Source of the DNA: Octopus sinensis
Lineage: Eukaryota
Assembly: GCF_006345805.1 (NCBI RefSeq)
Contig: NC_043022.1
Span: 1,178,001-1,242,000 of the forward strand
DNA: 64,000 nucleotides
Reading direction: 5' to 3'
Shown: one piece after another, positions 13,303 to 14,146 of the stretch
How positions within the stretch are numbered: the first letter of the stretch is position 1
How the letters are laid out: each line of letters opens with the position of its first letter
Notes under the pieces: generated by a model
The model's input: the letters and a program-made list of their open reading frames with translations, nothing else
Told to the model about the DNA's origin: nothing
The model's database searches: none
Program-made: the position numbers and the translations under genes

Positions 13303-14146
13303 TATTATTAATAGTAATTTTTATTAACTTTTATAGCTTTAGAATCTTATGAACTGTACCACGGATTTAATTATTTTTCATCTCCATATATGTTAGCCTT
13401 TTTTTTTTTTTTTTTTTTATATATATATAAAAAAAAAACTATTAGCCAAATATGTATAATATCGGTACTTATTGATATTAATATATACACTATTATATTT
13501 TGTTTTATTTTGTTCTGTTACCTTCCTTTTTTGTACAAATGTGTATTATATTATATAAGTGTAGCTTTATGATGTATAAGTTTTTATATTTTACATTTTT
13601 ATATTTTATATTTATATGTATATGATTGTATAATATTTTTCACTATTATAACAAATTTAATTTAATTCTCTGAAGAGGCCGTGGGGCATCCTTGTTAATG
13701 CCTCATTTATACCTGCCTTTATGGCTTATAGGTTAAATGAGGTATGACTGTCCTCACTGCCGAAACAGCTGTCAGTTTTGATTTATTTGCATATTATATT
13801 TGAAAATTTTTTACTTATATCTCTTTATCTTGTTACTATTACTGTATATCTCATTTCATTTTATGTATTGCCTTTACTCATATGTAATGGTGTATTAAAG
13901 TATGGATTGAGTATCATCGGATAGTTGATGTTTTACTGATTTAAGTATATTTCTCCATTCTCTAATTTTGTAGTATTAATTTACGGTAATATTATTACCT
14001 TTACCCATATAATGCAAAAGATGAACTGATTGTTTGACAATTTTTAACATCTATGTATTAATTTTGTTGGGTACCTATCTAGCAGTATATTGGATATATA
14101 TTATCCCATGGTGGGTTGAATTTTCAACCCCTATCTCATTTTATAA
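11456..14146 (+). repeat. 5' pseudo-LTR: direct copy of 16423-19748 lacking 16941-17567
   Basis: AACTTGCCCCTC at 11456 = 16423; junction AAGAACTT|TGGAAGG at 11970/11971; match ends at CATTTTATAA 14146 = 19748. Confidence 0.93.
13670..13773 (+). ncRNA. Hammerhead ribozyme motif with 85-nt stem II, copy 2
   Basis: CTGAAGA (13670) GGC..GCC GAAA (13762) C-AGCT-G TC; palindromic ACAGCTGT stem III; predicted cleavage after 13773; stem I weak and AU-rich. Confidence 0.75.

What the first reader, a model, noticed from the sequence alone, without database searches (positions are those of the whole stretch)
13670..13773. Hammerhead ribozyme with an 85-nt, five-helix stem II in the pseudo-LTR of an intact Penelope-like element (three copies)
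Seen: CTGAAGA and GAAA core boxes separated by 85 nt that fold as GGC/GCC, GTGGGG/CCTCAC, a 12-bp helix (13698-13709 with 13734-13745), ACCT/AGGT and a GCC-TTTAT-GGC cap. Stem III is the palindrome ACAGCTGT ending at a GTC cleavage triplet. Copies at 19272-19375 (+) and 8952-9055 (-). Known: Penelope pseudo-LTRs carry minimal hammerheads with palindromic stem III that cleave as dimers, usually with a short stem II. Inference: the long arm is an extra RNA domain (RT docking, dimerisation or localisation) inside the catalytic fold. It is a GC-richer structured island in an otherwise very AT-rich UTR. Stem I is weak and interrupted.
Basis: partly seen in the sequence, partly recalled or inferred. 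Interest (0 to 1): 0.88.

Follow-up and report, generated by a model that had tools for sequence, protein, structure and literature searches.

The report
Long-armed hammerhead ribozyme in a retrotransposon
A self-cleaving hammerhead RNA motif of the kind always found in Penelope-like retrotransposons is really there in three copies, but one of its three stems is stretched into an 85-base hairpin, a variant I also found in related elements of the octopod Argonauta and in none of 80 other relatives.

Summary
CTGAAGA and GAAA boxes lie 85 nt apart, stem II closes with G10.1-C11.1, stem III is the palindrome ACAGCTGT, and the cleavage triplet is GUC. There are three identical copies. A strict descriptor gives 0.005 hits per shuffled window. 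The motif lies in sense orientation in the pseudo-LTR and 3' UTR of an intact 5.6-kb Penelope-like element. That element belongs to the 'Hydra' clade (DKT motif, CxCX5C linker, C-terminal GIY-YIG, (TA)n target). The host is probably a cephalopod, because the window shares SINE-like repeats with Argonauta hians.

The 85-nt arm is one rod-like hairpin of about 33 bp. It is the most stable structure in the 2.6-kb UTR. In 80 other Hydra-clade loci the hammerheads have stem II spans of only 10-25 nt. Argonauta elements (41-43% protein identity) carry arms of 55, 69, 95 and 144 nt, unrelated in sequence, around an intact or nearly intact core.

So this is a real, lineage-specific long-stem-II variant of the known PLE hammerhead. 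It most likely acts as a dimer. Cleavage is unproven. Rfam and a custom covariance model do not detect the motif.

The parts
13670..13773 (+). Hammerhead copy 1, in the upstream pseudo-LTR. Box CUGAAGA 13670-76; stem II arm 13677-13761; GAA 13762-64; palindromic stem III 13765-72; cleavage after C13773.
13652..13669 (+). 5' strand of the weak, interrupted stem I of copy 1. It pairs with 13774-13792.
   Evidence: RNAfold; in the predicted dimer it pairs in trans
13774..13792 (+). 3' strand of stem I of copy 1, and first bases of the predicted 5'-OH cleavage product.
19272..19375 (+). Hammerhead copy 2, in the 3' UTR / downstream pseudo-LTR of the full-length unit. Identical to copy 1.
8952..9055 (-). 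Hammerhead copy 3, in the inverted 5'-truncated copy. Identical to copy 1.
14147..19748 (+). Full-length Hydra-clade Penelope-like element unit of 5.6 kb. The 3' UTR (17131-19748) holds the hammerhead 373 nt before the 3' end.
   Evidence: self-BLAST; junctions
14266..17130 (+). Intact ORF of 954 aa from TTG, with the likely ATG at 14287. [quoted passage not shown]
   Evidence: motif definitions from PMC8557442
11456..14146 (+). 5'-truncated tandem copy forming the upstream pseudo-LTR. It equals 16423-16940 plus 17566-19748 and lacks about 625 bp.
8752..11455 (-). Inverted 5'-truncated copy, the reverse complement of 16862-19578. It lacks the last 170 nt of the unit.
8730..8751 (.). (TA)n at the left edge of the insertion complex.
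19749..19770 (.). (TA)n at the right edge of the insertion complex, the target typical of the Hydra clade.
   Evidence: PMC8557442

Best explanation
This is a type I hammerhead ribozyme of a Hydra-clade Penelope-like retrotransposon in a probable cephalopod genome. Its stem II has been expanded, in this lineage, from the usual 3-11 bp hairpin into a self-folding rod of about 33 bp (85 nt).

Shown:
- The full catalytic core, the G10.1-C11.1 pair, the A15.1-U16.1 pair and the GUC site are present.
- The motif lies in sense orientation in both pseudo-LTRs.
- The arm folds on its own far better than shuffled sequence and than anything else in the UTR.
- Relatives carry hammerheads at the equivalent place: short-stemmed in most, long-armed in Argonauta.

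Inferred:
- Stem III (ACAGCUGU) cannot close as a hairpin, so two hammerheads pair through it. The two can lie on one tandem or read-through transcript or on two RNAs. Each core is completed in trans, forming a double hammerhead.
- As shown for the Anolis Poseidon element, cleavage is probably slow and helped by the element's own protein. It may not be needed for target-primed reverse transcription itself.
- The arm's minimal role is architectural. A long insertion in loop II is tolerated only if it folds into a closed rod that holds the two core halves together. PLE mini-hammerheads lack the loop I-loop II contact that would limit stem II length.

Whether the rod has any further function is open.
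For: - Sequence anatomy.
- Chance expectation of 0.005 per window.
- Arm stability: z = -5.15, and an outlier within the UTR.
- Dimer prediction: with the core kept unpaired, -92.3 against 2 x -39.8 kcal/mol, with an 8-bp intermolecular stem III and stem I formed in trans.
- PLE context: tandem plus inverted partial copies and (TA)n flanks.
- ORF homology to mollusc PLE proteins, and Hydra-clade motifs.
- Hammerheads at the equivalent place in relatives: Solemya at 44 bits and L004 at 26 bits with model R1; 58 of 80 metagenomic Hydra loci carry sense-strand hammerheads, against 1 locus (2 candidates) on the antisense control strand.
- Long arms in Argonauta hians elements, with conserved core boxes, a palindromic stem III and a stem II flush with the core in three of the four types (one starts with an A.C mismatch): 95 nt (L001, L007), 144 nt (L008), and 55 and 69 nt with a compensatory stem I change.
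- Long-armed elements look recently active. Pseudo-LTRs are 100% identical in L001 and copies are 98% identical here, with intact ORFs.
- Literature: PLE hammerheads are palindromic in stem III, dimeric and slow (PMC4209133). Cleavage is protein-dependent and dispensable for insertion in vitro (PMC11167929).
Against: - There is no biochemical evidence of cleavage.
- Rfam finds no hammerhead here at gathering or E <= 10. Rfam also misses the canonical Solemya one, so this carries little weight.
- A covariance model built from 22 short Hydra-clade hammerheads does not recover the motif. It finds only the 3' half, at 7.9 bits and E = 2.2.
- Stem I is weak, AU-rich and interrupted.
- The three window copies are identical, so there is no covariation evidence for the arm.
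- The unpaired nucleotide between A9 and 10.1 that Cervera and de la Pena report as typical is absent.
- The element's 3' end lies 373 nt beyond the cleavage site. The RNA that was reverse-transcribed was therefore either uncleaved at that site or re-ligated.
- Naiad PLEs thrive without hammerheads, so cleavage may be dispensable.
Confidence: 0.6

Rival explanations
1. The arm is a functional module in its own right: a docking platform for the element's RT/EN protein or a host factor. Binding would activate or time cleavage, or mark the RNA for reverse transcription.
For: - The long-rod feature recurs in at least four diverged cephalopod families but in none of 80 other Hydra loci.
- The arm is GC-enriched and the most stable structure in an AT-rich UTR.
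- The PLE protein is needed for hammerhead cleavage in the Anolis element and binds RNA next to the hammerhead (PMC11167929).
Against: - The arms share no sequence or length (85, 95, 144, 55 and 69 nt).
- Two Argonauta arms have microsatellite-like apices, which suggests slippage rather than design.
- No covariation data exist.
- Short-stem relatives work with homologous proteins.
Confidence: 0.17
2. It is a disabled or non-catalytic hammerhead relic. An insertion into loop II, or the weak stem I, has abolished cleavage. The element transposes regardless, because cleavage is dispensable, and the core is intact only because the family is young.
For: - Stem I is weak, and covariance models do not detect the motif.
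- Hammerhead mutants do not affect insertion in vitro (PMC11167929).
- Naiads lack hammerheads altogether (PMC8557442).
- The window copies are only about 2% diverged.
Against: - The core boxes and palindromic stem III are preserved in several long-armed families whose proteins are only about 41-54% identical to each other or to the window ORF. This is hard to explain without selection.
- Each arm is a closed, stable hairpin flush with the core, as needed for function.
Confidence: 0.18
3. It is a chance occurrence of the two short boxes around an unrelated hairpin, for example a small inverted-repeat insertion or a pre-miRNA-like hairpin.
For: - The boxes are short.
- Loose scans give chance hits, such as 42165-42224 (-) inside a mariner-like remnant.
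- There is a weak miRNA-model hit on the arm at E = 5.
Against: - The strict descriptor expectation is 0.005 per window.
- The motif sits in the place and orientation where PLE hammerheads belong.
- The stem III sequence is identical to that of a short Hydra hammerhead (L021, ACAGCTGT).
- Argonauta elements show analogous long arms.
- The arm sequence occurs nowhere else in the window.
Confidence: 0.03

Closest known systems
Minimal type I hammerheads of Penelope-like elements (Cervera & de la Pena 2014, PMC4209133; Lunse et al. 2017, cited in PMC6765202)
   Same: - Location in the pseudo-LTRs, in sense orientation.
- Full catalytic core and a G10.1-C11.1 pair.
- Very short, palindromic stem III that implies dimeric action.
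- Short, weak stem I and no loop I-loop II tertiary motif.
   Different: - Stem II is 6-8 bp with a small loop in those. Here it is an 85-nt, roughly 33-bp interrupted rod.
- The usual unpaired nucleotide between A9 and 10.1 is absent.
Canonical hammerheads of Hydra-clade PLEs (Craig et al. 2021, PMC8557442; surveyed here in 80 metagenomic loci, Solemya velum and L004)
   Same: - Same element clade (DKT, CxCX5C, C-terminal GIY-YIG, (TA)n target).
- Same boxes. One member (L021) has the same stem III, ACAGCTGT.
- Position downstream of the ORF.
   Different: - Their stem II span is 10-25 nt and their elements are under 3 kb.
- Here the span is 85 nt in a 5.6-kb element.
- Model R1, built from them, does not recover the window motif.
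Long-armed hammerheads of Argonauta hians Hydra-clade PLEs (found here: L001 9044-9157, L007 2506-2619, L008 10264-10426, L001 214-287, L007 11504-11591)
   Same: - Same architecture: core, then a long closed rod as stem II (55-144 nt), then an 8-nt palindromic stem III.
- The 95- and 144-nt types lie in the 3' UTR or pseudo-LTR of Hydra-clade PLEs; the context of the 55- and 69-nt types is unresolved.
- The hosts share SINE-like repeats with the window.
   Different: - No sequence similarity in the arms.
- The 95- and 144-nt arms have (TA/TG)n-like apices.
- One family has an A.C mismatch at 10.1/11.1.
- The cleavage nucleotide is A or U instead of C.
Discontinuous hammerhead of mammalian Clec2 3' UTRs (Martick et al. 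2008, as summarised in PMC6155905)
   Same: A natural hammerhead in which one helix is hugely extended (150-1500 nt) while the core stays intact. This shows that helices outside the core can be very long.
   Different: - That one is type III with helix I extended, in a host mRNA.
- Here the type is I, stem II is extended, and the motif lies in a retrotransposon.
'HHR_half_core' cases in Naiad PLEs (Craig et al. 2021 Methods)
   Same: Core halves are separated by an unusually long distance (35-50 nt) in PLE 3' UTRs.
   Different: Those did not fit any stem or loop descriptor and were not accepted as hammerheads. Here all three helices and the full core can be drawn.

Membership tests
Hammerhead ribozyme (type I) | Conserved core C3 U4 G5 A6 N7 G8 A9 ... 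G12 A13 A14 | tested here: met
   CUGAAGA at 13670-76 and GAA at 13762-64, in all three copies
Hammerhead ribozyme (type I) | A15.1-U16.1 pair and cleavage nucleotide H17 (not G) | tested here: met
   A13765 and U13772 are the ends of ACAGCUGU; C13773 gives a GUC triplet
Hammerhead ribozyme (type I) | Stem II closed by G10.1-C11.1 directly on the core | tested here: met
   G13677-C13761, followed by G-C and C-G
Hammerhead ribozyme (type I) | Three helices around the core, with stem I formed by the 5' and 3' flanks | tested here: inconclusive
   Stem II is strong. Stem III exists only as an intermolecular palindrome. Stem I is 2 + 4 + 5 bp, AU-rich and interrupted.
Hammerhead ribozyme (type I) | Match to curated covariance models (Rfam hammerhead families) | tested here: not met
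   No hit at gathering or at E <= 10. The control, the canonical Solemya PLE hammerhead, is also missed, so the test has little power for PLE-type hammerheads.
Hammerhead ribozyme (type I) | Site-specific self-cleavage giving 2',3'-cyclic phosphate and 5'-OH ends | not testable with these tools
   Needs in vitro transcription or RNA end mapping
PLE minimal hammerhead (Cervera & de la Pena 2014) | Located in the pseudo-LTRs of a PLE, same strand as the ORF | tested here: met
   copies at 13670 and 19272 flank the ORF at 14266-17130 on the + strand
PLE minimal hammerhead (Cervera & de la Pena 2014) | Palindromic positions 15.x-16.x (stem III) allowing a dimer | tested here: met
   ACAGCUGU is a perfect palindrome. 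Cofold predicts an intermolecular 8-bp helix and a dimer 12.7 kcal/mol below two monomers.
PLE minimal hammerhead (Cervera & de la Pena 2014) | Compact helix II (about 6-8 bp) with a small loop | tested here: not met
   85 nt and about 33 bp. Relatives span 10-25 nt.
PLE minimal hammerhead (Cervera & de la Pena 2014) | Unpaired nucleotide between A9 and 10.1 | tested here: not met
   GGC pairs flush with GCC; no bulge
Hydra-clade PLE hammerhead (profile built here) | Significant score with covariance model R1 built from 22 Hydra-clade hammerheads | tested here: not met
   Only the 3' half scores, at 7.9 bits and E = 2.2 with filters off. The long insertion probably exceeds what a 58-position model can span, so this is a limit of the model as much as of the motif.
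Hydra clade of Penelope-like elements (Craig et al. 2021) | Single ORF with RT and C-terminal GIY-YIG endonuclease | tested here: met
   the C-terminus aligns with the GIY-YIG region of the Solemya protein (Pfam PF01541 on the homologue). Pfam gave nothing on the window ORF itself.
Hydra clade of Penelope-like elements (Craig et al. 2021) | DKG motif changed to DKT; linker CxCX5C; CxxC and CxH around the EN | tested here: met
   ...THSDKTNN..., CNCRNKNKC, CSLC and CIH in the translation. The DKT and CNCR columns are conserved in alignment A1. Definitions.
Hydra clade of Penelope-like elements (Craig et al. 2021) | Insertion into (TA)n | tested here: met
   (TA)n on both sides of the complex
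Hydra clade of Penelope-like elements (Craig et al. 2021) | Short element (<3 kb) | tested here: not met
   The unit is 5602 bp, owing to N-rich ORF inserts and a 2.6-kb 3' UTR
Hydra clade of Penelope-like elements (Craig et al. 2021) | Absence of the CCHH motif of other EN+ PLEs; phylogenetic placement | not tested
   No reference alignment or tree of the named clades was available

The most novel reading that the evidence does not exclude
In cephalopod Hydra-clade Penelope-like elements the hammerhead has acquired a long stem II rod that works as a natural allosteric or docking module. The element's own RT/EN protein, or a host dsRNA-binding factor, would bind the rod and thereby switch on dimeric cleavage or select the RNA for reverse transcription. 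That would make it a natural counterpart of engineered stem-II aptazymes.
Probability: 0.12. Interest if true: 0.7.

Novelty: new variant of a known kind. Interest (0 to 1): 0.42.

Why it matters
Hammerheads in Penelope-like elements are universal, yet their function is unknown. They are also among the smallest natural ribozymes.

A lineage in which stem II has grown to 55-144 nt while the core stays intact shows three things:
- Descriptor- and model-based searches (RNAmotif descriptors with short helices, Rfam models) will miss such ribozymes. Elements called 'hammerhead-less' may need re-examination.
- Stem II of the dimeric PLE hammerhead is free of tertiary constraints in vivo.
- Short-arm and long-arm relatives with homologous proteins provide a natural set of constructs. 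They can be used to test whether the PLE protein recognises the hammerhead region.

It does not change the picture of what PLE hammerheads are.

Tried and rejected
1. Rfam at gathering on the whole window and at E <= 10 on 13600-13850 gave no hammerhead. The control shows Rfam also misses a canonical Hydra hammerhead, so the negative result is uninformative.

2. Covariance model R1, built from 22 short Hydra hammerheads, works on Solemya, L004 and one Argonauta type. It does not recover the 85-nt, 95-nt or 144-nt forms.

3. Closer relatives for covariation were sought in three ways, without success:
- The protein search found nothing above 43% identity.
- An exact or degenerate motif scan of JGI metagenomes gave 0 hits.
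- BLAST of the arm found only its own three copies.

4. Host identification through a LINE RT returned only unnamed metagenome contigs. Repeats shared with Argonauta loci gave the cephalopod inference instead.

5. Six 'long-span' candidates in the metagenomic loci were rejected. They were box 1 of a real short hammerhead joined to a distant GAAA, or coding sequence with a poor stem III. A cleaner long-arm descriptor gave 0 hits.

6. The second in-window candidate, 42165-42224 (-), was rejected as probable chance. It is single copy, antisense inside a mariner-like transposase remnant, and has A-U at 10.1/11.1.

7. A mini-intron inside the arm (GU at 13681 ... AG at 13731) was considered by eye and rejected. 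Removing it would destroy the GUGGGG/CCUCAC helix, and the 5' splice site is poor.

8. The mir-2188 hit on the arm's minus strand (E = 5) is taken as chance.

9. Pfam on the window ORF gave nothing. Domain identity rests on homologues.

10. The Lunse et al. 2017 paper and the Craig et al. supplements could not be read. A prior mention of long stem II there cannot be excluded.

Full report
OBSERVATION.
The sequence at 13670-13773 reads CTGAAGA | GGC ... 85 nt ... GCC | GAA | ACAGCTGT | C. Identical copies lie at 19272-19375 (+) and 8952-9055 (-). The helices stack into one irregular hairpin of about 33 bp, not a multi-way junction. RNAfold gives -41.3 kcal/mol for the 104 nt, with z = -5.15 against 200 dinucleotide shuffles.

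I wrote a strict descriptor: both boxes, G10.1-C11.1 with at least 3 flush pairs, a perfect 6-10 nt A...T palindrome, and H17 not G. It finds only this family in the window and gives 0.005 hits per shuffled window. Within the 2.6-kb, 24% GC 3' UTR, the hammerhead window is the most stable 104-nt segment. It scores -41.4 kcal/mol against a median of -11.2, with the next independent peak at -26.7, and it is 47% GC.

CONTEXT.
Self-BLAST resolves the typical Penelope-like arrangement:
- A full-length unit at 14147-19748.
- An upstream 5'-truncated tandem copy at 11456-14146, which is the pseudo-LTR and lacks about 625 bp.
- An inverted 5'-truncated copy at 8752-11455.

All three are about 98% identical, and (TA)n flanks the complex on both sides. 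The unit carries one intact ORF, 14266-17130, of 954 aa with the likely ATG at 14287.

Pfam finds nothing on this ORF. Protein search does find hundreds of relatives, the best at 39-43% identity. They include proteins of the bivalve Solemya velum and the octopod Argonauta hians. [quoted passage not shown]

The translation shows the DKT motif, the CxCX5C linker (CNCRNKNKC), and CxxC/CxH around the endonuclease. Together with (TA)n targeting, these are the features Craig et al. 2021 use to define the 'Hydra' clade of PLEs (PMC8557442). The element is atypically long for that clade: 5.6 kb against under 3 kb. The extra length comes from two N-rich low-complexity inserts in the ORF and a long AT-rich 3' UTR.

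The window's SINE-like repeats match Argonauta loci at 78-86% identity (31 alignments) and match none in the Solemya locus. The host is therefore probably a cephalopod. A LINE RT search did not name it.

RELATIVES.
In Solemya the hammerhead lies 69 nt after the stop codon and is canonical and short, with a stem II span of 22 nt.

I fetched 80 Hydra-clade loci from marine metagenomes. A descriptor scan found sense-strand hammerheads in 58 of them, against 2 candidates on the antisense control strand. Stem II spans were 10-25 nt, with clear covariation in stems I and II and near-palindromic stem III. One of them (L021) has the same stem III as the window, ACAGCTGT. Six long-span candidates were artefacts. 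A cleaner long-arm descriptor found nothing on either strand in these 80 loci.

Argonauta hians is different. Every PLE locus I could fetch has long-armed hammerheads:
- L001 and L007: 95 nt between the boxes, a 13-bp basal helix after an A.C mismatch, stem III ACTGCAGT, z = -4.4 and -3.9.
- L008: 144 nt, GCAA/UUGC flush with the core, stem III ACACGTGT, a rod of -48 kcal/mol.
- A fourth type with 55- and 69-nt arms and stem III ACAATTGT. Its two copies differ by a compensatory change in stem I.

The L001 pseudo-LTRs are 100% identical and its ORF is intact, so long-armed elements appear to have been active recently.

The arms of the different families share no sequence with each other or with the window's arm. 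The apices of the 95- and 144-nt arms are (TA/TG)n-like. What is shared is the architecture: a conserved core, apart from an A.C mismatch at 10.1/11.1 in one family, with a long closed rod in place of a short stem II.

IS IT A HAMMERHEAD?
By sequence criteria, yes. All invariant core nucleotides are present, along with G10.1-C11.1, A15.1-U16.1 and a GUC site. The place and strand are right, and the stem III is palindromic.

By profile criteria, no. Rfam gives no hit. As a control, Rfam also misses the canonical Solemya hammerhead, so this test has little power for PLE-type motifs. My own covariance model R1 was built from 22 short Hydra hammerheads. It scores Solemya at 44 bits, L004 at 26 bits and the 55-nt Argonauta form at 20 bits. 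In the window it sees only the 3' half of the motif, at 7.9 bits and E = 2.2. The 85-nt insertion is probably beyond what such a model can span.

Stem I is weak: 2 + 4 + 5 bp with internal loops. Catalysis cannot be tested here.

HOW IT MOST LIKELY WORKS.
ACAGCUGU cannot form a hairpin. With the core held unpaired, RNAcofold puts the homodimer at -92.3 kcal/mol against -79.6 for two monomers. The dimer has an 8-bp intermolecular stem III, and each stem I forms in trans. This is the double-hammerhead geometry known for newt, ASBVd and PLE hammerheads (PMC4209133; PMC6765202).

Cleavage at both pseudo-LTR copies would release a 5602-nt unit-length RNA, 13774-19375. For the Anolis Poseidon element, hammerhead cleavage needed the element's protein. 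It was not required for insertion in vitro, and reverse transcription started internally (PMC11167929).

The layout here fits that picture. The element's 3' end (19748) lies 373 nt beyond the cleavage site. The template that was copied was therefore either not cut at that site or was re-joined.

My reading of the arm rests on two points. PLE mini-hammerheads lack the loop I-loop II contact that fixes stem II length. A large insertion in loop II is then compatible with function only if it folds into a closed rod that keeps the two core halves together. This explains why every long arm is a stable hairpin flush with the core. It also explains why the window's arm is GC-enriched in an AT-rich UTR. 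These steps are inference.

RIVALS.
It is not excluded and is favoured by the recurrence of long rods in one lineage. It is disfavoured by the lack of any shared sequence or length and by the microsatellite-like apices.
- The motif is a dead relic that is tolerated because cleavage is dispensable. This is possible, but the core is preserved in several long-armed families whose proteins are only about 41-54% identical, which argues for selection.
- It is a chance motif. This is very unlikely, given the 0.005 expectation plus the context.

NOVELTY.
Hammerheads in PLE pseudo-LTRs are well known. In the literature I could read, their helix II is described as 6-8 bp or, for Hydra, 'canonical'. The nearest mention is Craig et al.'s 'HHR_half_core' cases in Naiads, with halves 35-50 nt apart, which were not accepted as hammerheads. 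I could not read Lunse et al. 2017 or the Craig supplements.

I therefore rate this a new variant of a known kind. It is of moderate interest to ribozyme and transposon specialists, mainly in two ways:
- It warns that descriptor-based searches miss such forms.
- Short- and long-armed relatives make a ready-made series for experiments.

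Noticed in passing
window 49397-49456 (+): Another PLE-type minimal hammerhead: CTGATGA ... GAAACGTACGT|T with stem I CTGAG/CTCAA. Model R1 scores it at 20.6 bits, E = 0.002. It is single copy in the window, next to a SINE-like repeat, with no PLE ORF nearby.
   Followed up: partly
window 5413-5464 (+): A minimal hammerhead-like motif, CACCTGATGA-[21 nt]-GAAACGT|T-GTGTT, with almost no stem III. 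R1 scores it at 14.7 bits, E = 0.14. It may be a solitary PLE remnant.
   Followed up: partly
window 42165-42224 (-): A hammerhead-like match: CTGATGA, a 43-nt stem II, ACCGGT|C. It has A-U at 10.1/11.1 and lies antisense within a mariner-like transposase remnant, as a single copy. It is probably chance.
   Followed up: partly
window 14266-17130 (+), roughly residues 510-638 and 706-814: Two asparagine-rich low-complexity inserts in the PLE ORF are absent from all homologues. They make the protein 954 aa against about 700-770 aa, and the reading frame stays open through them.
   Followed up: partly
window 11456-14146 vs 16423-19748; 8752 vs 19578: The upstream tandem copy lacks the segment 16941-17565. 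The inverted copy ends 170 nt short of the unit's 3' end, so the + copies carry a 170-nt 'tail'. This recalls the tail signature ascribed to internal initiation of reverse transcription in PLEs.
   Followed up: partly
L008 7017-7174 = 10339-10496 (Argonauta hians): The upstream pseudo-LTR remnant of this element starts inside the 144-nt hammerhead arm. The 5' truncation point (the end of cDNA synthesis) therefore falls within the rod, and only the 3' half of the ribozyme is present upstream.
   Followed up: no
L001 9095-9115, L008 10320-10365 (Argonauta hians): The apices of the long stem II arms are (TA/TG)n microsatellite-like, and Hydra-clade PLEs insert into (TA)n. The tract might anneal to the target, as reverse-complement telomeric repeats do next to Athena hammerheads. 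The window's arm has no such tract.
   Followed up: no
window, many sites (e.g. 20472-20803, 39228-39640, 43634-44037, 52630-53061; 34068-34383, 47509-47836, 50741-51070): Two or more abundant SINE-like repeat families, 65-92% identical among copies, match Argonauta hians loci at 78-86%. This points to a cephalopod host.
   Followed up: partly
window 18-1744 (+) and 32616-34037 (-): LINE-type reverse transcriptase ORFs. The first region is 53% GC, far above its surroundings. The best database relatives of the second are 84% identical, on unnamed metagenome contigs.
   Followed up: partly
window 28650-29450, 45870-46470, 40000-40800, 59500-60000: Long, imperfect microsatellite arrays with 8-12 nt periodicity (TCTA/TATC- and TG/TA-rich). 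Some are mutually reverse-complementary over about 240 nt at 80-86%.
   Followed up: no
L002 46486-46573 (Solemya velum): The canonical short hammerhead is embedded in a longer hairpin. Stem I continues as UCAUAUUUG/CAAAUAUGA beyond an internal loop, so stem I is much stronger than in the window's element.
   Followed up: no
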